Shown: piece by piece, positions 23,100 to 63,995 of the stretch
Layout of the letters: each line of letters begins with the position of its first letter
Position numbering within the stretch: position 1 is the stretch's first letter
Source of the DNA: Podarcis cretensis
Taxonomy: Eukaryota
Assembly (NCBI GenBank): GCA_951804945.1
Contig: OX638157.1
Location: 40,362,001-40,426,000, forward strand
DNA: 64,000 nt
Direction of reading: 5' to 3'
Position numbers and translations under genes: made by a program
The notes under the pieces: model-generated
The model's input: the letters and a program-made list of their open reading frames with translations, nothing else
Databases searched by the model: none
What the model was told of the DNA's origin: nothing

Positions 23100-23340
23100 C
23101 GGTGGTACCTCTAGTTACGAACTTAATTCGTTCCAGAGGTCCATTCTTAACCTGAAACTGTTCTTAACTACAGACATGCTTTCACTAATGGGGCCTCTTG
23201 CTGCCACTGCGCCGCCGGCACACGATTTCCGTTCTCATCCTGGGGCAAAGTTCTCAACTTGAGATAACTCTTCCAGGTTAGTGGAGTTTGTAACCTGAAG
23301 CGTTTGTAACCTGAGGCATTTGTAACTCGAAGCACCACTG
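23100..23340. mobile_element. Tc1/mariner MITE, same family, opposite orientation
   Basis: TA|CGGTGGTACCTC...AAGCACCACTG|TA. Confidence 0.85.
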
Positions 23341-23720
23341 TACTCAGATGTGAAAATCTCCACCTGATTCTCTAAAATTCTTCAGAAGTATACTAATATT
23401 TTAACAGGTTTTTAAAATGTAATTTAAGAGAAGAACTCACGTAACTATACAAAGCTTTTCTACGATTAAGCTAAACATATACTGGTAGCATGTAAAATTT
23501 AATCAATTAAATCCTATAGGAAATGTTGTACAGGTTTTAGATTACCAAAGCTACAATCCCTATTGGAAGTACCTGTAAACAGAGTGAGATTTATCTTCAT
23601 GTAAACATGTATAGAATTGCACTGCAGCCCATTAGTTATCAAAGGGGCGGGCAGAAATATGAACACACCACTGAAGGTGCCAAGGTAACTTTTTTTTGTC
23701 AAGCTTGGCTTAATTTAGTA

Positions 23721-23933
23721 CAGTGGTACCTCTGGTTGTGGACACGATCCGTTCTGGGGTGCTGTTCACACCCTGAAAAGTCCGTAACCAGAGCGGCGCT
23801 TCTGCGCATGTGCGAAGCATGATAGAGCGCTTCTGTGCATGAACGAATCACGCAGAACGCTTCTGCGCATGTGGCGAAACCCAGAAGTAAACACTTCCAG
23901 ATTTGACGCATTCTTAACCCGAGAAAACGCAAC
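23721..23933. mobile_element. Tc1/mariner MITE with different interior, right TIR lost
   Basis: TA|CAGTGGTACCTCTGGTTG; internal CGCTTCTGCGCATG repeats. Confidence 0.7.
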
Positions 23934-25872: not shown

Positions 25873-26242
25873 ATAAACTAACCAAACAAAAACAAATCTA
25901 AAATAAATTCTGTTGAAAATGAAAGAATACTCCTTTTCTTGATTTGTTATCAAAGTTAAAGGGTTATGAAAGAACATGTGCTATGGGTGGCATTCAAATG
26001 AGTTTTACTCAGAGCCTCCCTGTCTCTGCTGAGAACAAGGCCTATTAGGGCATGGAAGCCTGAGTCAGTACTCCACCCCTGGAACTCACAAAGAAACAAT
26101 TTTGTAACACAATTTTGTGAACAATTTTGTAACACTTGTTTTGGCTGATAGTCAAACTATTTACAAATTGTGAAATATCTAGCGAATGAAGGTGCAATTT
26201 GCACACACATTTTGATCAGCTTCCACATTTAAAGAGATAATA

Positions 26243-26484
26243 CAGTGGTACTTCGGGTTAGATACACTTCAGGTTACATACGCTTCAGGTTACAGACTCC
26301 GCTAACCCAGAAATATTACCTCGGGTTAAGAACTTTGCTTCAGGATGAGAACAGAAATCGTGCAGTGGCGGCGCAGTGGCAGCAGGAGGCCCCATTAACT
26401 AAAGTGGTGCTTCAGGTTAAGAACAGTTTCAGGTTAAGAACAGACCTCCAGAACAAATTAAGTTCTTAACCCGAGGTACCACTG
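26243..26484. mobile_element. Tc1/mariner (Tigger-like) MITE
   Basis: TA|CAGTGGTACTTCGGGTTA...TAACCCGAGGTACCACTG|TA. Confidence 0.9.
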
Positions 26485-26679
26485 TAGACTAAATAGACAT
26501 GAGTCTCTCAGACTGCAAAATGGAAATATCCCTAGGCATAGCTAGGGATATCTAGACTTACCGTATATAGATAGGAGAGCCAAATCTAACCATGGATTGA
26601 ACATTGACAGCAGTTACAGACTTTGGGCTCTCAAATTTCCTGCAGTGCCCTGTGCAATGCTAAAATCCACGTTGCACAG

Positions 26680-28187: not shown

Positions 28188-28923
28188 TACTCTACTCTGA
28201 CAGAAACCTCCCCAAACCCAATACATGACCTTACCATGCCTTGAGGTGCAATTTATGCAAGACAAACCTAGAACTCATATCATTGTCTGTTCTCCTGGCT
28301 CACAATGTCATTAAAAAATGTTCTGTACCCTACTGATAATGGTAGCAATTAATAGTCAATTGCAGTGTATTTACTTAATAATCAGTGGTCATCTATTGAT
28401 AATTTAAATATTTTCAAAATATTCAAAAAAGTGACCTAGAGATTTATTTATTTTTTTTACCATGGTAGCACTTACATATTTCAAGAGTATTACTCAAATT
28501 ATTTCATAAGAAGGAATATACAGATAGAAGTCATCCACTGAAACTAAAGAGGAAACCAGTCTGGGTAGAGGAGCTCCTTGCATGCTATCAAATTTCCACA
28601 CCCAGAACAAATTGCTGAAAGCTGTTGATATGTCAATGCTTTAAGTATTTATGGATGCGGCAGACACAAAATCAGGAAACATGTCTTATCCATATTGGTG
28701 ACAGTTAGCAGGAATGTATTTTAGAACCTGAGTGTATCTTCTATGGATAATACACCAGACTATTTATTCCTTGGAGAAAAGTCCAGAACAAAATTTTAAC
28801 TACAGTATATGCATAAGGACAAATTTGCAAAGTTTTGTTTCAGTAACACTTCATATTCTTAATGGACTTTTAAAAATATATTAGTATATACTAATATAGT
28901 ATATTAGTATATTAAATATATTA

Positions 28924-30284
28924 GTTTTTCCAGTGTTTAGCGACGAGTATTCTTGCTGCTGTTGTTGCATACATAAAAAATGTTCGGTCCTTCTTTAACA
29001 CCCTCTGGCCAACAATGCCCAAAAGGAAGGCCTCTGGTTTCTTAGGGAAGGTATACTTAAATACCTTTTTCAACTCATTATATATCATTTCCCAGAAGGC
29101 CTTAACCCTAGGGCAAGTCCACCAGAGGTGAAAGAACGTTCCCTCAGTTTCTTTACATTTCCAACATTTATTGTCAGACAGATGATATATTTTTGCAAGC
29201 TTGACTGGGGTCATGTACCACCTATATATCATTTTCATAATATTTTCTTTCAAAGCATTGCATGCTGTAAATTTCATACCGGTGGTCCATAACCTTTCCC
29301 AGTCAGCAAACATGATATTACACCCAATGTCCTGAGCCCATTTTATCATAGCTGATTTGACCGTTTCATCTTGTGTATTCCATTTTAACAGCAGGTTATA
29401 CATTCTTGAGAGTACCTTAGTCTTAGGTTCTAACAGTTCTGTTTCCAACTTCGATTTTTCCACCTGGAATCCTATCTTTTTATCCAGTTTAAAAACCTCT
29501 TTAATCTGAGCATAATGTAGCCAATCTCGCACTTTATCTTTTAGTTTCTCCAAACTCTGCAACCTCCAATTGTCTCCATCTTTTTCTAGTATTTCCCAAT
29601 ATTTCAGCCATTTGACCTCCATATTGGGTCTTTTCAGAGCCTTAGCTTCCATAGATGACAACCACCTTGGGGTCTTATTTTCTAATAAGTCTTTATATTT
29701 TGTCCAGACATTAAACACTGCTTTCCTGACAATATGGTTCTTGAAAGCCTTGTGAATCTTAACCTTAAAGGTAAAGGTAAGGTAAAGGTACCCCTGCCCG
29801 TACGGGCTAGTCTTGACAGACTCTGGGGTTGTGCGCCCATCTCACTTAAGAGGCCAGGGGCCAGCGCTGTCCGGAGACACTTCCGGGTCACGTGGCCAGC
29901 GTGACATCGCTGCTCTGGAGAGCCAGAGCCGCACACGGAAACGCCGTTTACCTTCCCGCTGGTAAGCGGTCCCTATTTATCTACTTGCACCCGGAGGTGC
30001 TTTCGAACTGCTAGGTTGGCAGGCGCTGGGACCGAGCAGCGGGAGCGCACCCCGCCGCAGGGATTCGAACCGCCGACCTTTCGATCGGCAAGTCCGAGGC
30101 GCTGAGGCTTTAACCCACAGCGCCACCTGCGTCCCCGAATCTTAACCTTGTCATACCACAAATATGCATGCCATCCAAAAGCGTTGTTAAACCCTTCCAA
30201 ATCTAAAACATCAGTGTTTTCAAGAAGCAGCCAATCTTTCAACCAGCAGAAAGCTGCTGATTCATAATACAGCCTTAAGTCTAG
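28924..30284 (-). mobile_element. L1-clade LINE ORF2 C-terminal fragment, split by a SINE
   Basis: LDLRLYYESAAFCWLKDW...; CCHC knuckle CWKCKETEGTFFHLWWTC. Removing the SINE and one TSD restores ...YDKVKIHKAFKNHIVRKAVFNVWTK..., about 326 stop-free codons. Confidence 0.9.
29767..30136 (-). mobile_element. Sauria-type SINE, full length, 13-bp TSD
   Basis: tRNA-like head GGGGACGCAGGTGGCGCTGTGGGTTAAAG with B box GGTTCGAATCC; (ACCTTT)n tail; TSD GAATCTTAACCTT at 29754-29766 and 30137-30149. Confidence 0.92.
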
Positions 30285-42789: not shown

Positions 42790-43026
42790 CAGATTAAACA
42801 CAGTTTCCACAATATCCCTGTTGGATACTTCTCCGACTTCCACCAGTCCTGTCAGAACAGCAAATTTCATCCTGATACCACGAATAGGGATTCCTGGATT
42901 CAAAGGCTGCAGCTTGCTCTCCATTTCGGCCGTGTTTCCTTCTTTTCCTCCTCCGGTACCACCTCCCCCTCCTCCATCATCACCTGTTGGCCGAGGAGAA
43001 GCAACCTGTTTGTCTTCACTCGCCAT
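42790..43026 (-). CDS. LRBA: LRBA first coding exon (CDS part), MASEDKQVASPRPTGDDGGG...GIRMKFAVLTGLVEVGEVSNRDIVETVFNL
   Basis: Translation matches the LRBA N-terminus (MASED...IRGIRMKFAVLTGLVEVGEVSNRDIVETVFNL). ATG context GCTATGG; donor CTG|GTAAGG at 42789; 79 codons, phase 0. The 5'UTR part of the exon extends to an acceptor at 43169 (TTTTCAG) or 43176 (TCTTTAG). Confidence 0.97.
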
Positions 43027-43379: not shown

Positions 43380-44240
43380 CTGCAAGGAAGAGAGCGCGGG
43401 ACTCCCGAAGGCGTTTACTTCTGTATTATTATTATTATTATTATTATAGACGCGCCTCTCCCCTGCCCCGCTCTGTTTCTGCAGTGCTTCCCTCCGCCGT
43501 CCTTGTGCTCCAGCAGCTGAGGTAACTGCAAGCTCCGCTCCTCCCTTCACGCACAGTCACAGGTGCAAGGACAAAGTAGGGCCGGCAAAGAAGTTCCCAC
43601 TCACGCAGCCCTGCTGCTGCTCCTCGCCTCTGCCGCGGACGGGGCCGGCGGGGAGGGACGAGGCTCTGCCGACCCCAGGCAGCTCCACGGGCGGGAGGTG
43701 TCTCCGGTGCTTCCCCACCAACAGCCTGGCTTCTACCTGCCCGGGGTAGAGAAGAGGGATGGGCAAAGAACTTCGACCTCAGGCAAGCGGCTGGAAGTTT
43801 CCTGTGCAGCTCCTTCACTCCGCCGACGCCGCGAGGAGCTCCTCCATCGCTTCCTGCCTGCCTTAGCAGTTGCTGCGGCGGCGGCTGCTGCTGCTGCTGC
43901 TGCTGCTCTCTGCCGCCATGACAGCGCTGTGCCGAGCCCCGGGAGTGTTGCCGGGCGAGCGGCAAGTGCGCCTGCGCGGCGGCCAAGAGCGGGCGGGGCA
44001 GGGAGGCGAGAAGGCAGCGGGCTTGGTGGAGGGGGGGGGAGGAGGCGCCCGCGCAGGCTCAGGTGAGCACAGGTGTGTCCAGGTGAGGCGCAGGCGTAGC
44101 CCGAACGAAGGTTCCCGTCTGTTCTCCTCGAGGCAAGGGAAACGCTGCGCCGTTGCTGTGAAGGAGAGCTGTGTTATCTCCTTTCTTTTCTTCTTTTAGT
44201 TTCGGGCAAGCGGCACCTGAAGGGCAAGCGGCAGTTTCAG
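43380..44240. promoter_or_regulatory. LRBA: CpG-island promoter of LRBA with non-coding first exon(s)
   Basis: Dense CpG/GC block in otherwise CpG-poor DNA, directly upstream of the first coding exon. NRF1-like TGCGCCTGCGC 43967-43977; GC box GGGCGGGG 43991-43998. Candidate minus-strand donors: GCAG|GTAGAA (exon end 43737), TGC|GTGAGT (43605), GGG|GTGAGT (43299). Confidence 0.85.
43875..43907. repeat. (GCG)3(GCT)8 triplet repeat in probable LRBA 5'UTR
   Basis: Direct reading. Confidence 0.95.
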
Positions 44241-44546
44241 GAAACTGCAAACCTACCTTTTTAGATAGGTCCAGGAAACCTGAGGGGCAAGGAATTAGTA
44301 GCGTCTTTTTATTTGTTGCGTCTTCACGCACTATGGACATCTGGTGACTTGAGGTGCTAGTCCTGTCGAATTCAGGACTGCTTCCGGGGAAACGTGGTCC
44401 CGTGTAGATTGAGATGGGGAGGCGGCGGGGGGAGCGGATGCCCTTTAGCACTGGTGTGGATAATATACGAAAATGAAACCTCTGCTGAACAGGGTTCAAC
44501 GTTCAACTGGGTTTCTTAATTGTTCTTGGCTGCTTTCTAGTTTGCA

Positions 44547-45344
44547 AAGTATATACACAAAGTATCAAATGTGGTGACAGTAGTAATCATACAACAAAAC
44601 AACACCACCACAAACTGGCTTATAAGTACAATATGAACCAAATTTACTAGAACAATAGCTAGAATAGAGATAGACTTGTAACCATTCAAACAACAAACAT
44701 ACTAAGGTGCCATGTGCAAGACAAAGCCTGAAGATACTGTAAACATGGAGTGGATAAATGTACAACTCTATCTTAACAAGTTACATTTGCAGTAAACATT
44801 ATGCAGACTGGATAAATGAACCGTTCACCACAAGTGGGCAAAAGGAGTATACTTTCTTTATCCTGAGCAAACCGTTTTGTATGATTGGCTTTTCGGACTG
44901 ATGAAGCGTGTAGCGAAACCTGTAATATATCCAGAGTACAGGTCTCCTTTTGCCCACTTGCGTTATTTTCACCAGGGTGGTGGCTTTGATTTGTCTTCCC
45001 ATGATTGATCCATGCATACAGCTTTGTGTTTCCAACTCAGGACCCATTGAAGAACATCTCATCCAGCTCAATCTTTGAAAAACAGCTTTGAAAAACTTTT
45101 CCATATTCTCCAGTGTGCTACCCTTGACATTGTGGTGGCACGGGGTTGCCATTCTGTGATTGGACTTACGCTGCTTGTTGAACAGTTCATTTAACCAGTC
45201 TGTATAATGTATCTCCAGGCTTTGTCTTGCACATGGCACCTTAGTATGTTTGTTGTTTGAATGGTTACAAGTCTATCTCTATTCTATTATTCTAGTGAAT
45301 TTGGTTTTATACTTATAAGCCAGTTTGTGGTGGTGGTGTTTTGT
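44547..45344 (+). mobile_element. Non-autonomous hammerhead-carrying retroelement (retrozyme-like or Penelope pLTR-like) with inverted 5' segment
   Basis: 16-bp direct repeat TGCTTTCTAGTTTGCA at 44531-44546 and 45345-45360; long inverted repeat (44592-44830 vs 45175-45346, with a perfect 71-bp core); central hammerhead; no polyA tail; no recognisable RT or endonuclease ORF. Confidence 0.82.
44895..44947 (+). ncRNA. Type I hammerhead ribozyme, predicted cleavage after GUC at 44944
   Basis: GGA-CUGAUGA(44898-44904)-A-GC[GUGUA]GC-GAAA(44915-44918). Stem III ACCUGUA(44918-24)/UACAGGU(44937-43), 7 bp; C17=44944; stem I GGA(44895-97)/UCC(44945-47), possibly extended by GGC(44887-89)/GCC(44952-54) across a U-rich internal loop. 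Confidence 0.88.
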
Positions 45345-46452
45345 TGCTTTCTAGTTTGCATCAAAATGAAGGCTCGTATATGATCATATCAATCCTGGTT
45401 ATAGTTGTATAAAGTTGCATACCCGTCAAACAATCGTTTTGAAAACTAAAAACACAACACTTTGACTCACTGTTCCTAGTTTTTATAAGACTATACACGT
45501 TCCAATGACACTTGTATGCCAAAGAGCATGTTGCCATCAACACCTGACAGAACCATCAGTGGCCAGAAGGACCTGTTGGGGCAGCTCCTCCCCCACCTTA
45601 CCTGAGGCTACTTAAGACCTGCTTGTCCTAAAGGGAAGGCAAAACCTTTGAAGCCCAAGGTAGGGCCATCAGTTCCTACAGAACATTTTAGCTAATAATA
45701 TTTTGTACCATTTGTATGAATGCTGCATTTTAAATTGTAAAACGCCATGGATACCTTGCATTTGCATTCATTGGTTAATATAATGCAATGAAAATATACA
45801 AAAATAGTTCACGTGGTTGGGTGGTTAGCTCTAAGAGGCCTCAAACTACTTGGAACTATTCAGTAGCACAGTTCCACTATAAAATGAGTATGAGGCAAAT
45901 CGAATATCAGTTTTGTAACTCTGCTTAAAATAAGTAATAAACTGATCAGCATATATTGTTCAGAGTGTACCACTTGTTTTGGACTTGGCTGGGTCCTTTG
46001 TCCTTCCAAAATTGCAAAATATACCCGTAAGTCTTCTACATGTAGAGGTCTGTGAAAGCTGTGTTTGCTGTAATGTGTAAAGAGCACTGCAAGCTTGGTT
46101 TTTTGTTTTGTTTGGTTTTTGTATTATGAGTACAGGGGAATCCCTGCTTACATGGGGGTTCTGTTCTGAGTCACTGCCCAGAAATAAGTTCCAGCACGTT
46201 CCACTCCCATTCCACCTGTGGCCCACCCTGTTCCGCCCCTTTTTTGTGCCCAAACTGGCATGTGTGTCAATGGTTGCCTATCATGTGCAAGTGGGGAGGT
46301 GCCTGTACATAGGTCAGCCAAAGCAACACTTGTCCATCACACATTCTCCTGCTGCTAGAATCAAACTTCCAAAATGCAGGTAGCGTAATTGGTCCTAATC
46401 GCCAGCCACAATCCCTTTATTTTCCTCTCACTGGTTTCTTGGTTGTCTAGAA

Positions 46453-46588
46453 CAGGCTTCCTCAACCTCGGCCCTCCAGGCGTTTTTGGCCTACAACTCC
46501 CATGATCCCTAGCTAGCGGGACCAGTGGTCAGGGATGATGGGAATTGTAGTCTCAAAACATCTGGAGAGCCGAGGTTGAGGAAGCCTG
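46453..46588. mobile_element. hAT MITE, 136 bp, near-palindromic
   Basis: CAGGCTTCCTCAACC TIRs; TSD GTCTAGAA / GTCTAGAC. Confidence 0.92.
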
Positions 46589-46782
46589 GTCTAGACCGAA
46601 TACAGCCAGCATGGTGCTGGACTGCAACTCACATCATCCCTGACCACTAAGCATGTTGGCTGGGACTCATGGAAGTTGGGAGTCCAACAACATCTAGAGG
46701 GCATCACGTTGGCTAGTTCCCATACATGTGCACTTGAAAGAATAAAAAGTTACAGCTATCAGAATCCACAAAATCAGTATGG

Positions 46783-47607: not shown

Positions 47608-47608
47608 G

Positions 47609-47642
<34 letters not shown>

Positions 47643-57227: not shown

Positions 57228-59261
57228 TACTTTGGGTTGAGTATAATGACTTCAATGTGGTTTACAAAACTTCACTTCACAACAAACCAGTCAGCTGCTA
57301 ATGTGTTATATCACACCGTGTGACATTTTCATAGTGTCACTTTTTACAGTTGGGCTGTTTTAAAGAACAAATTCAAGCATAATAACATTAGCAAGTGCAA
57401 GTGAGTCCTTAAAAAAAGAGACGCTATTCTGCCTTTGGGGAAATCTGCACCCAGTATGTCAGTACACCATGTACAAAAATAAAATAAAGCAAAAATCTCT
57501 CTTGGTTCAGAGCTGATAAAAGTGGTGCGGTAAATAAAATGATAAATTCTCAGTTCAATAGCCAAAAGGAAAATGAATACATTGCTATGCATTGTTTACC
57601 CAATGTTTTAAAAAGCTCTTGAAGTAATGCATAAACATAAAGGACACTGAACTGGAATTTCTGAAAGATGGTCTGATCTACACCAGCTGCAATACCAACA
57701 TACATTTCATTGGCGTGCCAAGAGGCAATTACTTTAGAACTAACGAGGAGGCAGCACCCCACCCGTACCCAGTGGAGCACCCTTTCAAATACATTTTTCA
57801 AAAAAAAAATGGATAAAAGCATGAGCACGTAAGATACTGAACTGCAAGCAAATCCAAACACAGTTGTGTTAATGCTCTGCATGCAATGTCTGCTCCAGAA
57901 GCAAAAGCGGGGGGGGGGGGTCATTAGTTTGACTGCATTTGTAGTTTATTTATTTCATGTCTTTTAAAATGGATTGTTTTCCTCCAAATGTATTTTTAAA
58001 ACACGTGCCCATTTTATTGATTTATTTAGTAATATTCTTTAGACCACATTTCGTGACACTGGTCATAATGTGGTTCCCAAGATAATGAAATCACACAGCA
58101 TTTAAAACCAGGAGCACAATTAAAATCATCAAAAATTAACAGCAACAGTAATTACAGTGCAGGAAATCCTAAAACCAAGCTTAAACAAAAACCCATGAAA
58201 TCCTGTGAGAACAGATGTGTTGTTAATTAGGTGATGGAAAGCCATCAGTGATCAGTGTCTCCAACGGGAGTGAGTTCAGAAGCATATTACAGATCTGCTC
58301 AGTGGCCCAAAAAGACTGGCAAGCCCTAGAAGAGGAGCAAGGTTTCTAGACGCATGCAATGCCCAACTCTGCATCTGGTCTTCTTGGCACGAACCTCTAT
58401 TTGGCAATTAATCACCCCTGAAGAGAACAAATATATTTTCCTGATGAACACTGCCCCTTCTGGTTAAATCAACCACAGGGACCTCAACCAGTTTTTCACA
58501 TGGATATCTATTGGTGCACCACTCTTTAACTCCTGACATGCAAGGTCAAGTACAGTCTCTGTCAACTTATACCTATCTGGATTGGCTCACCTATGCTTCC
58601 ATCCACTCGCAAAAAAAATTGAAGGTAACAGGTCTCCAGTTACTTGGCAACCTTTTGTTTTTCAATCCCCTCCCTCCTTAGCCTCAGTCTCAATCATGTT
58701 CATGTTTTGTCTCAGGGACCCCTCCACACACACACTTCTCATTAAACTGGGGCTTTAGGTTTTTGTCCCCAAGGGCCCCATCACTGCCCAATCTCAATGG
58801 GAGGCTCCAGAACAATTTCAACCCCTAGTAGCTCCTCTACTCTCTTCCCTTGCCTCTTCTCTTTCTGTGTGTGCTTCTCTCCAAGTTAGTTGATGCCCTT
58901 AAGGGGACATGAAGTCATGTGGCCTCCCATGAGGTAACTTTCCCATCCTTAAACCACCTGTAGTGGGTTCTCCACCATGCAGAGTTTCCTGGGTGAAGCA
59001 CAGTCTGCAAACTTTGAAGGGTAGGTTATGTCTTGTGTCCATGCGTAGCCATTTCAAGATCCCTGCTATGCAACTGTGGCCCCAGACTCCTGGGTCGCTG
59101 TGAAACTTGGGGAACCCACTGCTTCTTTTTGCCTGGCAACATGTAACTCATAGCATTTTAACCTTTGTTTCTTTCTCTTCTATTTCCTTGATCTTGCTGT
59201 CTTTTCTGGCCGCCCAACTTCTACTTAAAAACCTCAAAAGAATGAGAGTCCGTCACATCCC

Positions 59262-59670
59262 AAGGGAGTCTCTTCTCTTCCACTGTCAAGCACCTCTTAG
59301 GATCAGAAGGTTCTTCCTGTTAGTTGGAATATCCTGTCTTGTAACTTGAATCCATTAGTTCAAGTACTACTCTTTGGAGCAGGAGAAAACAAGCTTGCTC
59401 CATCGTCCATGTGACAGCCCTTTAAATATTTGAAGATGGCTATCATATTTCATCTCAAGTTTCCTCTTTCCCAGGCTAAACTTGACCAACTCCCTCAACT
59501 GTTCCTCATTAGGCTTAGTTTGCAGATCCTTGATCATTTTGCTCATCCTCCTCTGCACACGTTGCAACTTGTCAATATTCTTTTTAGATTGTGATGCCCA
59601 GGACCAGAAAGAGTACTCCAGGTGTGGTTTGACCAAGGCAAAAATGAGTGGTGACTTTCCTTGACCTGGA
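59262..59670 (-). mobile_element. CR1 LINE fragment (degraded)
   Basis: VKPHLEYS..WASQSKKNIDKLQRVQRR. Confidence 0.85.
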
Positions 59671-61096
59671 CGCTACATTTCTGAGTAGTATACATGCAGA
59701 GACTCAAGCACTGAGTGCTACATGATTGCAAAGCCTTGGAGGTATATAAAATATTTGCACTGTTTAGCACTGCAAAGACAAATGCTTTTACATAAGAACA
59801 CACTCTGAACTAATCCACCAAAATCAGTCAGTTAAGCCTTTAAGATGTACACAGCACAGTATCTAGCTCTTTTTCAAGAAATGTGTGGGAAAATGAAGCA
59901 TATATTGTTTGTTAGAAGCTGAGCAAACAGAACTGGAATTCTGATGTTTCCTAGCTGTGAATCATCCATTTTTTTTAAAGTCAGAGCTTTTTTCTTTTTT
60001 TTTAATGCCTACAGTGCTGACACCCAGTCCAGGTGCATATGCTTAGAGTCAACCCAGGAATAAAAATGTCTGCTACGACTGATTGCAGCCAATCCATTTT
60101 GGAAAAAAGAATGTCTATCCTTCACTCTACTGAACTATTCTTTTGTTCTAAAGATAAGAATGACGAAAGAATATGTGAATTTGGTTTTGTCATTTGAAAA
60201 TTTAGAAGACCCCCTATCTAATAAGTATTTTTCTATATAATACTGACATATTATATAGAAATATATATATATTGCAATTACAGCAGCACAGTGCCACTGT
60301 TGGGGTCCCAAATGGTGCTGGGGGTGGGACAGGACTGGTAAGAGGCTGAGTTTTGATTGCATTCCTGAGACTAACATTTGCTTTGACCCACCAGTGTTGC
60401 AGCATGTTTTCTATAGATGTTTCACTTGAACAAGTTTACATTGGAATGTAAGCTTAAAACTCACATGTATCATGGGTTATGCAGTAGGTCTTTCTCGTCC
60501 TAAAAACAGACCATTAATTTCAGGAAACAACTTTAAGTACAGCTCACCAACATTTAAAACTTGAACCACACATTATAAAACAAAAAGCATTATTGTCATG
60601 AATTACGGGGATCAAAGGCAGCAAGGAATCTGTTTCTTTGAAATCAACCAAATTCCATTCACATGAGCCATAATGTCTAACACTACTGAAAGTGCTACTA
60701 CTTCTGAATTTTTACTAGCCAGGTTTTCTCCCCAGTCCTACTGGAAATTCTGGTTCCTCAAGTGATAAAATCTTATCAGATCAGCAACTCAGGCCATTTC
60801 TTCCTTCTCTTCAAGTGACATAATTTGAAGCGCTTGGACCAAATGCTGGGTGTCCATAAGAGATCCAAAATGACACCTTCCCTCCAAGTTACTGAACTTG
60901 AAATTTTAATGCAACTGTATGCCAGATATGTAGAATGTGAGCAATGCAAATGGTTTTGGATAGGTATACTTATATAAATTTTTAAGGCGCTTAGAAACAA
61001 TGTTGAAAACCCTGAAAATATTTGCTTTCATGTTCTTATACAAGTAAATTTGTATTGCTTGAAGAACAGGGCTGGAGAACCTTTGACTCTCTAGAT

Positions 61097-61232
61097 CAGG
61101 CTTCCTCAACCTCGGCCCTCCAGATGTTTTGAGACTACAATTCCCATCATCCCTGACCACTGGTCCCGCTAGCTAGGGATCATGGGAGTTGTAGGCCAAA
61201 AACATCTGGAGGGCCAAGGTTGAGGAAGCCTG
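61097..61232. mobile_element. hAT MITE, 136 bp, same family, nested in an older MITE
   Basis: Same TIRs; perfect TSD CTCTAGAT (61089-96, 61233-40). Confidence 0.93.
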
Positions 61233-61659
61233 CTCTAGATGTTGCTGAACTACAACTCCCATCAGCCCCAGCAACTATGACCAATGCCCAGGGATTAGGA
61301 AGGCCATATGTTTCTCACTGATGGCTAAGAGCATCTCCATACAAAGGGCATCCTGATTATGTTAGGACCCACCCACCCCCATACATTACCACATTTATAA
61401 AGCCCTTTCTAAGCAACCTGGGGGCATGGGACTAGGCTAGCCTGCATGGCTGCACTACCTGCTTCAAGTGGTCTTTCAACAGGCAGAACCACCACCACCT
61501 TTTAATTATCTGAATCCATGCCTTGAAATGCAAGGTAAAAGCCTCAAGTGGAATCAAATACATGGCTAGGATAGGAGGGAAGCTGCAGACATGTCTCCCC
61601 CCCATTCATTTATTTGTTTAGAACACTTTTGGGTTGCCCAGCCAACTAAGTCCTCTGGA

Positions 61660-62146
61660 CTGTGTCCAGTTCTGGGCGCCACAATTTAAGGATATTAACA
61701 AGCTGGAACGTGTGCAGAGGATAGTCACCAAGATGATAAAACGTCTGGAAATCAATCCTTAAGAAGAACAGTCGAGGGCGTTGGTTATGTTTAGCCTGGT
61801 AAAAAGGAAACTGAGAGGAGATATGATAGCCATCTTCAAAGGGCTGTCACATGGAAGATGGAGCAAGTTTGTTTTTTTCCTGCTCCAGAGGACAGGACCC
61901 GAACTAATGGATTCAAGTTACAGGAAAGGAGATTCTGACTGAACAGAACTTTCTGAAAGTAAGAGGTGTTTGACAGTAGAACAGACTCCCTTGGGGGATT
62001 GTAGACTCCCCTTCATTGGAGGTTTTCAAGCAGAGGTTGGATGGCCATCTGTCATGTAGGATCTAGTTGAGATTCCTGCATTGCAGGAGGTTAGACTAGA
62101 TGAGTCTTGGGGTCCCTTCCAACTCTACAGTTCTTTGATTCTATGA
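61660..62146 (+). mobile_element. CR1 LINE 3' end
   Basis: [10 protein letters not shown]-coding sequence through GGTCCCTTCCAACTCTACAGTTCTTTGATTCTATGA tail. Confidence 0.9.
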
Positions 62147-63004: not shown

Positions 63005-63995
63005 CAGGCACTTTTGGAGGAAATTGATTTCCTAGATCCATTTCCATCAGGGTCTAGGCCCATTTTTGGCACAGAAACTGATTGGTCATCCTGTATGATG
63101 ACCTCTCCTGGGAGAGAGACAGGGGAAATGTGTCCCTGTTAATTGTCCGTGACGGGTTTCAATACCATCAGCCATGGTATTCTTCTGGAGCTGCTACTTG
63201 AGTTAGGGATAGGCAGCCCCACTTTGCAGTGGATCAACTCCTACTTGGATGGTTGTTTCCAGAGAGGGATGCTTGGGGAGTGCTCTTTGGCCCTGTGGAA
63301 CCATCAATGTGGAGTTCTTCAGGGTTCACTTTTATCCTCTGTGCTGTTTAACATCTACATGAAACAGCTGAATGGGGTTATCTAGAGTTTTGGAGTATGC
63401 TGTCAGCAATATGCCCACGACACACAGCTCTACTTCTCGTTTACATCTGCAGGTCTGAAGATGTTTCAGAAACTTCAGCTGATGCAGAATTTGGTGGCAA
63501 GGTTGCTCAACAGGGAAAGACCATTTTAGCATATTATACTGGTCCTGAACTGACTGCACCAGTTGCCAATTAGTGTCTGGGCCCAGTTCAAAGTGCTGGT
63601 TAAACAACTTACAACTGCAATACCTCAAGGACAAACCTCTCCCCATATGAACTGGGCCCTGCAGTCATCATTTGAGGCCCTTCTTTGTTTACTTCTTCTA
63701 CAAGGGGTTTGGAAGATGGCAACATGAGAACAGGCCTTTTCTGTGGTGACTCTCAGTTTGTGGAATGCTCTTCCCAGGGCGGCTTTCCTGGCGCCTTCAT
63801 TACATATTTTTAGGCGCCAGGTTTCTCTTCAGTCAGAGAATGTTGTCTGGTTGATCAACTATCTATTTTTTTAAAAAAAACAACCCAAACCAACACTATT
63901 GGTTTGTTTTTGTTTGATTATGTATTTTGTATACTCATTTTGTATTTTACTGTTGTGAACTTTACCGGGGTCTTTGGCCAGCTGAAGGACAGCAT
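63005..63995 (+). mobile_element. L2 LINE fragment(s)
   Basis: FNTISHGILL..GVLQGSLLSSVLFNIYM..YAHDTQLY RT remnants, internal deletion, then L2 3' region. Confidence 0.8.

What the first reader, a model, noticed from the sequence alone, without database searches (positions are those of the whole stretch)
44887..44954. Apparently intact type I hammerhead ribozyme about 1 kb upstream of the likely LRBA transcription start
Seen: full catalytic core on the + strand (CUGAUGA 44898-44904, GAAA 44915-44918, GUC 44942-44944), 7-bp stem III, 2-bp stem II with GUGUA loop, and 3-bp stem I followed by a U-rich internal loop and a possible GGC/GCC extension. Known: an extra A between A9 and G10.1 is tolerated in natural hammerheads (e.g. 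CChMVd viroid), and a loop II / stem I bulge contact is typical of fast natural hammerheads. Minimal Penelope hammerheads usually have a very short stem III, so the stable one here is notable. Inference: it should self-cleave as a monomer after 44944.
Basis: partly seen in the sequence, partly recalled or inferred. Interest (0 to 1): 0.88.

Follow-up and report, generated by a model that had tools for sequence, protein, structure and literature searches.

The report
Hammerhead-like motif inside a Penelope-type insertion
A sequence with every conserved hammerhead-ribozyme base really is there, but it sits inside an ~800-bp Penelope-type retrotransposon insertion upstream of a lizard LRBA gene, so it is most likely baggage of that mobile element and not a host gene feature, and whether it cleaves is untested.

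Summary
The motif is in the sequence exactly as described: CUGAUGA, an extra A, a 2-bp stem II, GAAA, a 7-bp stem III, GUC and a 3-bp stem I. On its own it is weak evidence. No Rfam hammerhead model matches, even at E<=10. A descriptor this loose hits random sequence about 0.01-0.02 times per 64 kb, which is hundreds per genome. The hammerhead fold is not the minimum-energy fold.

The context changes the picture. The motif lies in an ~800-bp insertion (44547-45344) flanked by a perfect 16-nt target-site duplication. The insertion is built of two head-to-head 5'-truncated copies, with a 45-nt tail at one end only. This is the published signature of Penelope-like elements (PLEs), which carry type I hammerheads. 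The motif is on the sense strand of the longer copy and shows two PLE-hammerhead hallmarks: an extra nucleotide after A9, and a G10.1-C11.1 pair. The shorter copy begins within 1 nt of the predicted cut.

My best reading (about 0.55) is a PLE-lineage hammerhead with atypical proportions (short helix II, long helix III). Its link to LRBA is incidental, and in this locus a 17-bp competing helix probably blocks it. A chance motif remains plausible (about 0.35). Paralogs, orthologs and reads could not be obtained, so covariation and cleavage are untested.

The parts
44531..44546 (.). Left copy of the 16-nt target-site duplication (TGCTTTCTAGTTTGCA)
   Evidence: A perfect direct repeat of 45345-45360 that abuts the insertion on both sides.
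44547..44591 (-). 45-nt one-sided 'tail' at the outer (3') end of the inverted copy, absent from the other end
   Evidence: It has no counterpart beyond 45346. It shows no significant similarity to the region upstream of the core. PLE insertions often carry a 30-40-bp tail at one end only (PMC8557442; PMC11167929).
44592..44847 (-). Inverted, 5'-truncated copy of the element. Its inner end (44847) is the complement of 44944.
   Evidence: It is the reverse complement of 44944-44960 plus 45176-45346. There are 8 mismatches in 173 aligned nt (6 transitions), an extra 60 nt at 44738-44797, and two 4-nt indels.
44848..45346 (+). Direct, 5'-truncated copy of the element (sense strand +), which carries the hammerhead-like motif
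   Evidence: There are no other copies in the window.
44887..44954 (+). Type I hammerhead-like motif (the finding)
   Evidence: All pairs and core bases were verified. Energy of the hammerhead fold is -12.0 kcal/mol against an MFE of -14.1.
44898..44905 (+). Core box C3-A9 (CUGAUGA) plus an extra A before G10.1
44906..44914 (+). Stem-loop II: 2 bp (G-C, C-G) with loop GUGUA
44915..44918 (+). Core G12 A13 A14 A15.1
44918..44943 (+). Stem III hairpin: 7 Watson-Crick pairs with a 12-nt loop. This is the only helix that appears in every predicted fold.
44944..44945 (+). C17 and the predicted scissile bond (44944|44945). This is also the boundary of the inverted repeat.
   Evidence: Arms 44831-44847 and 44944-44960 are 100% complementary and stop here.
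44831..44847 (+). Left arm of a perfect 17-bp helix that competes with hammerhead stem I in any transcript that includes it
   Evidence: Folding 44815-44975 gives an MFE of -49.8 kcal/mol (z = -4.2) with this helix formed. The best fold with the hammerhead pairs enforced is -25.2.
44961..45175 (+). Segment present in the direct copy but missing from the inverted copy. The deletion is bounded by CTTG microhomology (44957-44960 and 45174-45177).
45345..45360 (.). Right copy of the target-site duplication
42790..43026 (-). LRBA exon 1 coding part (context only). A CpG-island-like promoter region lies at about 43400-44400.
   Evidence: The ORF peptide matches LRBA/neurobeachin N-termini. The best named hits are geckos at 83-86% identity. 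CpG o/e is 0.64-0.85 across 43400-44400.

Best explanation
The motif is the hammerhead ribozyme of a Penelope-like (PLE-type, probably non-autonomous or heavily truncated) retroelement. It was brought here by one retro-insertion of about 800 bp.

The insertion consists of two cDNA copies joined head to head. One is a 499-nt direct copy (44848-45346) that still contains the uncleaved ribozyme. The other is a shorter inverted copy (44547-44847). In sense orientation the inverted copy starts within 1 nt of the predicted cut and runs to the element's 3' end plus a 45-nt tail.

In the element's own RNA the ribozyme would cut after C17 (44944) and release a 3' fragment that can itself be reverse-transcribed.

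Shown here: the motif, the target-site duplication, the head-to-head architecture, the one-sided tail, and the coincidence of junction and predicted cut.

Inferred: descent from a functional hammerhead, cleavage in vivo at the time of insertion, and the PLE assignment, which rests on architecture with no reverse-transcriptase gene seen.

At this locus the copy is about 2% decayed. A 17-bp helix formed with the inverted arm probably locks it, and it has no demonstrated role for LRBA.
For: 1. The core is complete with clean closing pairs.
2. The insertion has a 16-nt perfect TSD, head-to-head 5'-truncated copies about 95% identical, and a tail at one end only. These are the features described for PLE insertions (PMC8557442). 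They fit a PLE enzyme that cleaves and extends both DNA strands and starts reverse transcription at two sites that bracket the tail (PMC11167929).
3. PLE pseudo-LTRs carry type I hammerheads (PMC4209133; PMC6765202).
4. The LRBA peptide places the window in a squamate, closest to geckos. Similar PLE hammerheads are reported in turtles and snakes, and a PLE hammerhead has been shown to cleave in the lizard Anolis.
5. The motif is on the sense strand of the longer copy.
6. It shows two hallmarks that were not built into the published descriptor: a nucleotide between A9 and G10.1, and G10.1-C11.1. Random sequence gave 0 such hits in 48 Mb.
7. The inner end of the inverted copy maps to 44944, 1 nt from the predicted cut. 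A uniformly placed truncation point would land there or at 44945 about 2 times in about 450.
8. A 2-bp stem II is common in natural hammerheads (PMC3088659).
Against: 1. No Rfam hammerhead model matches, even at E<=10.
2. Stems I (3 bp) and II (2 bp) carry little information. Motifs this loose occur about 0.01-0.02 times per 64 kb by chance, and the scan has read hundreds of windows of this genome.
3. The proportions are the opposite of metazoan PLE min-hammerheads, which have helix II of 6-8 bp and a minimal palindromic helix III.
4. The hammerhead fold is not the MFE, and the fold z-score is -0.19.
5. No paralog or ortholog could be obtained, so there is no conservation or covariation evidence.
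6. The junction is at 44944, not 44945. That is exactly the first unpaired base 3' of the stem III hairpin, so a reverse-transcriptase stop at a hairpin explains it equally well.
7. For the only PLE studied in vitro, hammerhead cleavage was not needed for insertion, and no RNA-seq reads ended at the cut.
8. No PLE reverse transcriptase or GIY-YIG ORF is present in the element.
Confidence: 0.55

Rival explanations
1. Chance match. The insertion is real, PLE-type or not, but the hammerhead-like arrangement is a coincidence. It is built around one ordinary 7-bp hairpin, a CUGAUGA heptamer and a GAAA, and it never cleaved. The inverted copy ends at 44944 because reverse transcription stopped at the foot of that hairpin, or at a random point.
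For: - Rfam gives no match.
- The chance rate is 0.011-0.019 per 64 kb, hundreds per genome.
- A looser hit at 63455 in the same window shows that such motifs do turn up.
- The fold z-score is -0.19 and the hammerhead fold is not the MFE.
- The architecture is unlike PLE min-hammerheads.
- Perreault 2011 warns that consensus-conforming sequences occur by chance in large databases.
- The junction includes C17, which fits a hairpin stop exactly.
Against: The chance rate within the sense strand of a 500-nt element is about 1e-4. In addition, the extra nucleotide, G10.1-C11.1 and the junction within 1 nt of the cut must all coincide. The motif also sits in exactly the kind of element known to carry hammerheads.
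Confidence: 0.35
2. One reading: an intact, fast, monomeric ribozyme that acts at this locus. For example, it might process promoter-upstream or divergent transcripts of LRBA, having been kept by the host.
For: The core is complete and stem III is stable. The motif lies 0.5-1.3 kb beyond a CpG-island-like LRBA promoter region, on the strand that divergent transcription would copy.
Against: - Any + strand transcript coming from the promoter side contains 44831-44847. That arm forms a perfect 17-bp helix over C17 and the stem I 3' strand, about 25 kcal/mol better than the hammerhead fold.
- The two arms differ by 8 mismatches in 173 nt (6 transitions) plus indels, the pattern of neutral decay.
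- No tertiary-contact motif could be verified.
- No expression data could be obtained.
Confidence: 0.05
3. The element is a DNA transposon or MITE-like foldback with long terminal inverted repeats, and has nothing to do with ribozymes or retrotransposition.
For: It has inverted arms of about 170-255 nt at both ends. It has no poly(A) and no RT ORF.
Against: A 16-nt TSD is unlike the short fixed TSDs of DNA transposon superfamilies (established knowledge). The ends are asymmetric: a 45-nt unpaired tail is present on one side only. The left arm is continuous with the inner 17-nt repeat, so it reads as a copy with a 217-nt microhomology-bounded deletion rather than as a terminal repeat.
Confidence: 0.05

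Closest known systems
Minimal type I hammerheads of Penelope-like elements (Cervera & de la Pena 2014; Lunse, Weinberg & Breaker 2017)
   Same: [quoted passage not shown]
   Different: Those have a long helix II (6-8 bp) and an almost absent, palindromic helix III, and they work as dimers with low activity. This motif has a 2-bp helix II and a 7-bp helix III with a 12-nt non-palindromic loop, so it would have to act as a monomer.
Hammerhead of Poseidon from Anolis carolinensis (PAc; Mob DNA 2024, PMC11167929)
   Same: Squamate host. The hammerhead lies upstream of the element's 3' end. The tail is explained by two reverse-transcription start sites, and both DNA strands are cleaved and extended, which explains head-to-head copies.
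   Different: In PAc the cut is about 90 nt from the reverse-transcription start, the ORF starts in stem II, cleavage was dispensable for insertion in vitro, and no reads ended at the cut. Here the cut would be 402 nt from the 3' end and no ORF follows. The sequences could not be compared because none is held.
Metazoan non-LTR retrozymes (Cervera & de la Pena 2020; Li, Clavereau & Pollet 2026 preprint)
   Same: Non-coding, low-GC, a few hundred nt, a type I hammerhead, long TSDs when present, and proposed derivation from PLE pseudo-LTRs.
   Different: Retrozymes are tandem repeats with a hammerhead in every unit. Here there is one motif, no tandem unit, and no significant similarity between the tail and the sequence upstream of the core.
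CChMVd (+) hammerhead with an extra A between A9 and G10.1 (De la Pena & Flores 2001; recalled from memory, and cited)
   Same: The same inserted A at the same core position, tolerated with a moderate loss of rate.
   Different: That one is a type III viroid ribozyme with normal helices.

Membership tests
Hammerhead ribozyme (any type) | Conserved core C3 U4 G5 A6 N7 G8 A9 / G12 A13 A14 / A15.1-U16.1 / H17 | tested here: met
   All are present, with one inserted A between A9 and G10.1.
Hammerhead ribozyme (any type) | Three helices around the core, with no mispair adjacent to the core (curation rule of Perreault 2011) | tested here: met
   A2.1-U1.1, G10.1-C11.1 and A15.1-U16.1 are all Watson-Crick. 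Helix lengths are 3, 2 and 7 bp (rule).
Hammerhead ribozyme (any type) | Match to an Rfam hammerhead covariance model | tested here: not met
   No hit at gathering score, nor at E<=10 on 268 nt or 81 nt.
Hammerhead ribozyme (any type) | Covariation or conservation of stems and core among homologs | not testable with these tools
   There is no paralog in the window. Metagenome and viral scans gave only unrelated coding matches.
Hammerhead ribozyme (any type) | Mg-dependent self-cleavage 3' of H17 | not testable with these tools
   This needs a bench assay. The only indirect hint is the copy junction at 44944.
Hammerhead ribozyme (any type) | Loop-loop or pseudoknot tertiary contact between helices I and II (fast natural forms) | tested here: inconclusive
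   Loop II (GUGUA) can pair with UAUAC at 44848-44852 (seen in the MFE). A 5-nt complement with G-U allowed is expected by chance in flanks of this length (my estimate).
PLE minimal hammerhead (min-HHR) | Nucleotide between A9 and G10.1, and a G10.1-C11.1 pair | tested here: met
   the criterion is.
PLE minimal hammerhead (min-HHR) | Long helix II (6-8 bp) | tested here: not met
   Helix II has 2 bp.
PLE minimal hammerhead (min-HHR) | Minimal or palindromic helix III that forces dimeric action | tested here: not met
   Helix III is 7 bp with a non-palindromic 12-nt loop.
Penelope-like element insertion | TSD of variable length, an adjacent inverted 5'-truncated copy, and a 30-40-bp tail at one end only | tested here: met
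   A 16-nt TSD, head-to-head copies and a 45-nt one-sided tail.
Penelope-like element insertion | RT plus GIY-YIG ORF, or sequence similarity to a known PLE | tested here: not met
   The only long ORF (146 aa, minus strand) has no Pfam family and no homolog. No PLE consensus library was available. This would be expected for a 5'-truncated or non-autonomous copy.
Non-LTR retrozyme | Tandem units, each with a type I hammerhead | tested here: not met
   There is no tandem repeat and only a single motif. Tail versus upstream similarity is not significant.

The most novel reading that the evidence does not exclude
Squamate genomes hold a PLE or retrozyme lineage whose hammerhead has swapped proportions (2-bp helix II, stable 7-bp helix III) and therefore cleaves as a monomer. 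In this reading the insertion is a genomic fossil of that cleavage in vivo: one of its two cDNAs was copied from an RNA whose 5' end was made by the ribozyme. That would be the first evidence that hammerhead-cleaved PLE RNA serves as a template for insertion. The only in vitro PLE study could not show this.
Probability: 0.25. Interest if true: 0.55.

Novelty: new variant of a known kind. Interest (0 to 1): 0.3.

Why it matters
Hammerheads in Penelope-like elements are well known, with well over 100,000 motifs reported, but their role is unresolved. They cleave poorly, are thought to need dimers, and were dispensable for insertion in the one reconstituted system.

A PLE-borne hammerhead able to act as a monomer, together with insertions whose internal junctions fall at the cut site, would give a direct genome-wide test of whether cleaved RNA is used as a template.

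For LRBA biology it most likely means nothing. It is one more transposon insertion near a promoter.

Tried and rejected
- **Rfam.** I searched at gathering score and at E<=10 on three nested ranges. No hammerhead family matched; the only low hits were unrelated (RT-18, snoJ26, sR55).
- **Paralogs in the window.** There are none. No PLE-type minimal hammerhead with a canonical core occurs anywhere in the window.
- **The 146-aa minus-strand ORF over the motif (44799-45239).** It has no Pfam family and no homolog among 5.8 billion proteins. I take it as a chance ORF. It was also my route to paralogous DNA, and that route failed.
- **Metagenome scan for the core pattern.** It gave one unrelated contig with no stem III or cut site.
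- **Viral-contig scans.** 25 contigs matched, all unrelated phage sequence that lacks stem III and the cut site downstream of GAAAC (it reads as coding DNA). Two other element patterns gave nothing.
- **Tandem or circular unit, the '~390-nt cleavage-to-cleavage monomer' of a sister note.** The tail does not resemble the sequence upstream of the core (alignment score 9 against a shuffle mean of 7.5, p about 0.2). No second motif or unit exists.
- **Snap-back self-priming as the origin of the inverted copy.** There is no terminal complementarity at 44848 and 44943. Two-strand priming, as published for PLEs, fits better.
- **DNA-transposon reading.** I rejected it because of the 16-nt TSD and the asymmetric ends.
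- **Earlier-findings look-ups by sequence and by relatives.** Both came back blank.

Full report
**Observation**

- CUGAUGA at 44898-44904, then an extra A at 44905.
- A 2-bp stem II (G44906-C44914, C44907-G44913) closed by GUGUA.
- GAAA at 44915-44918.
- Seven Watson-Crick pairs of stem III (44918-44924 with 44937-44943) around a 12-nt loop.
- GUC, with C17 at 44944.
- A 3-bp stem I (44895-44897 with 44945-44947), followed by a U-rich 5x4 internal loop and a GGC/GCC extension.

**Weight of the motif alone**

No Rfam family reaches its gathering score anywhere in the window. No hammerhead model appears even at E<=10 when only 268 nt or 81 nt are searched.

I wrote a descriptor just loose enough to accept the candidate and ran it on first-order Markov sequence with the window's composition. 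It gave 12 hits in 40 Mb and 8 hits in 48 Mb. That is 0.011-0.019 per 64-kb window, or a few hundred per vertebrate genome. The scan has read hundreds of windows of this genome, so a chance hit of this quality somewhere is expected.

The isolated 68-mer folds no better than shuffles (z = -0.19). The hammerhead fold (-12.0 kcal/mol) lies above the MFE (-14.1). Only stem III is robust.

On the other side, a 2-bp stem II is explicitly common in natural hammerheads. The candidate also passes the curation rules of Perreault et al. 2011 (PMC3088659).

**Context**

The motif is not in ordinary promoter-upstream DNA. A perfect 16-nt direct repeat (44531-44546 and 45345-45360) flanks an ~800-bp insertion.

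Inside the insertion, 44592-44847 is the reverse complement of 44944-44960 plus 45176-45346. There are 8 mismatches in 173 aligned nt, 6 of them transitions. The left arm carries an extra 60 nt and two 4-nt indels, and it lacks 44961-45175, a gap bounded by a CTTG microhomology. The left arm runs without a break into the inner 17-nt repeat. The simplest reading is therefore two copies of one sequence joined head to head at 44847|44848:
- a direct copy, 44848-45346;
- a shorter inverted copy, 44592-44847, which alone carries a further 45 nt (44547-44591) at its outer end.

This set of features is what Craig et al. 2021 describe for Penelope-like elements (PMC8557442): a variable-length TSD, an adjacent inverted 5'-truncated copy, and a 30-40-bp tail at one end only. 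The reconstituted Anolis Poseidon enzyme explains it. That enzyme cleaves and extends both DNA strands, and it starts reverse transcription at two sites that bracket the tail (PMC11167929).

The LRBA exon-1 peptide encoded at 42790-43026 (-) is closest to gecko sequences (83-86% identity) and to annotated LRBA of other reptiles. The host is therefore a squamate. Similar PLE hammerheads are reported in turtles and snakes, and one has been shown to cleave in the lizard Anolis.

No RT or GIY-YIG ORF lies in the element. Its one long ORF has no family and no homolog. The PLE assignment therefore rests on architecture alone.

**Why the context raises the odds**

PLE pseudo-LTRs carry type I hammerheads on the sense strand. 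The candidate is on the sense strand of the longer copy.

It shows two features that Cervera and de la Pena list as emerging from PLE hammerheads without being in their descriptor: a nucleotide between A9 and G10.1, and a G10.1-C11.1 pair. With those two added, my null gave 0 hits in 48 Mb.

The inverted copy, read in sense, begins at the complement of 44944, one base from the predicted scissile bond 44944|44945. A randomly placed truncation point would fall at one of those two positions about 2 times in 450.

The geometry is as that note says, but with two caveats. First, the boundary includes C17, so one extra matching base must be assumed (a 1 in 4 event). Second, 44944 is also the first unpaired base 3' of the stem III hairpin, which is where a reverse transcriptase might stop without any cleavage. 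Other unverified notes on this genome describe PLE fold-backs at hammerhead stems, so hairpin-linked junctions may be common. I rate the junction as moderate support, not proof.

**Why doubt remains**

The proportions are the reverse of metazoan PLE hammerheads, which have a long helix II and a minimal palindromic helix III that forces dimeric action. This is therefore not a member of that subclass.

In PAc, cleavage was dispensable for insertion and no reads ended at the cut.

I could obtain no second copy of this element from any source:
- the window holds none;
- pattern scans of metagenome and viral contigs returned only unrelated sequence.

**Behaviour at this locus**

Any + strand transcript that includes the inverted arm forms a perfect 17-bp helix between 44831-44847 and 44944-44960. 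That helix buries C17 and the 3' strand of stem I. The MFE of 44820-44975 is -49.8 kcal/mol, against -25.2 with the hammerhead pairs enforced. Even within the direct copy alone, the hammerhead fold is 4-8 kcal/mol above the MFE.

The CpG-island-like LRBA promoter region spans about 43400-44400. The motif lies 0.5-1.3 kb beyond it and points away from LRBA. Divergent transcripts from that promoter would contain the blocking arm.

The two copies differ by mostly transition mismatches plus indels, as expected for neutral decay. At about 2% decay per copy, an undamaged 68-nt motif is unremarkable whether or not it is under selection. I see no evidence for a host function.

**Verdict**

The most likely reading (about 0.55) is a hammerhead of a PLE-type retroelement with unusual proportions, carried in by a head-to-head retro-insertion. 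It may still be able to cleave slowly in isolation, and it is probably silenced by its own inverted arm in situ.

A chance motif inside such an insertion is the main rival (about 0.35). An exapted LRBA-linked ribozyme and a DNA-transposon reading are each unlikely (about 0.05).

If real, it is a new variant of a well-known kind. The point of some interest is the possible genomic record of in vivo cleavage, which can be tested genome-wide by plotting the truncation points of this family against the cut site.

No contig was taken for human, and no reads tool was used.

Noticed in passing
window 44799-45239 (-): A 146-aa ORF runs antisense through the whole centre of the insertion, including the hammerhead-like motif. 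It is one of only 10 ORFs of 130 aa or more in the window. It has no Pfam family and no homolog.
   Followed up: yes
window 46445-46678 and 61090-61295: There are two near-spacerless hairpin repeats: about 65-nt arms with 20 nt between them, 86-89% complementary. They look like copies of one short foldback or SINE-like family.
   Followed up: no
window 59207-59582 and 61688-62047: Inverted arms of about 370 nt (76-91% complementary) enclose about 2.1 kb. This could be another transposon or a PLE-type unit. My scans found no canonical hammerhead core in it.
   Followed up: partly
window 23179-23778 and 26241-26486: Inverted arms about 2.9 kb apart, whose outer ends read TACAGTGGTACC, which resembles Tc1/mariner termini (from memory).
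   Followed up: no
window 28921-29718 (-): The longest ORF in the window (265 aa) has no Pfam family.
   Followed up: partly
window 43424-43447, 43871-43907, 47608-47641: Microsatellites: (TAT)8 and (TGC)12 inside the LRBA 5' CpG-island region, and (GCTGTC)5.7 further upstream.
   Followed up: no
window 63455-63504 (+): A second, weaker hammerhead-like match to my descriptor: CUGAAGA, a 2-bp stem II, a 4-bp stem III and a 3-bp stem I. I take it as a chance hit, and it illustrates the background rate.
   Followed up: partly
window 44748-44763 and 44806-44821: A 16-nt direct repeat 58 nt apart lies within the 60-nt stretch that only the left arm carries. This suggests a local tandem duplication in the inverted copy.
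   Followed up: partly
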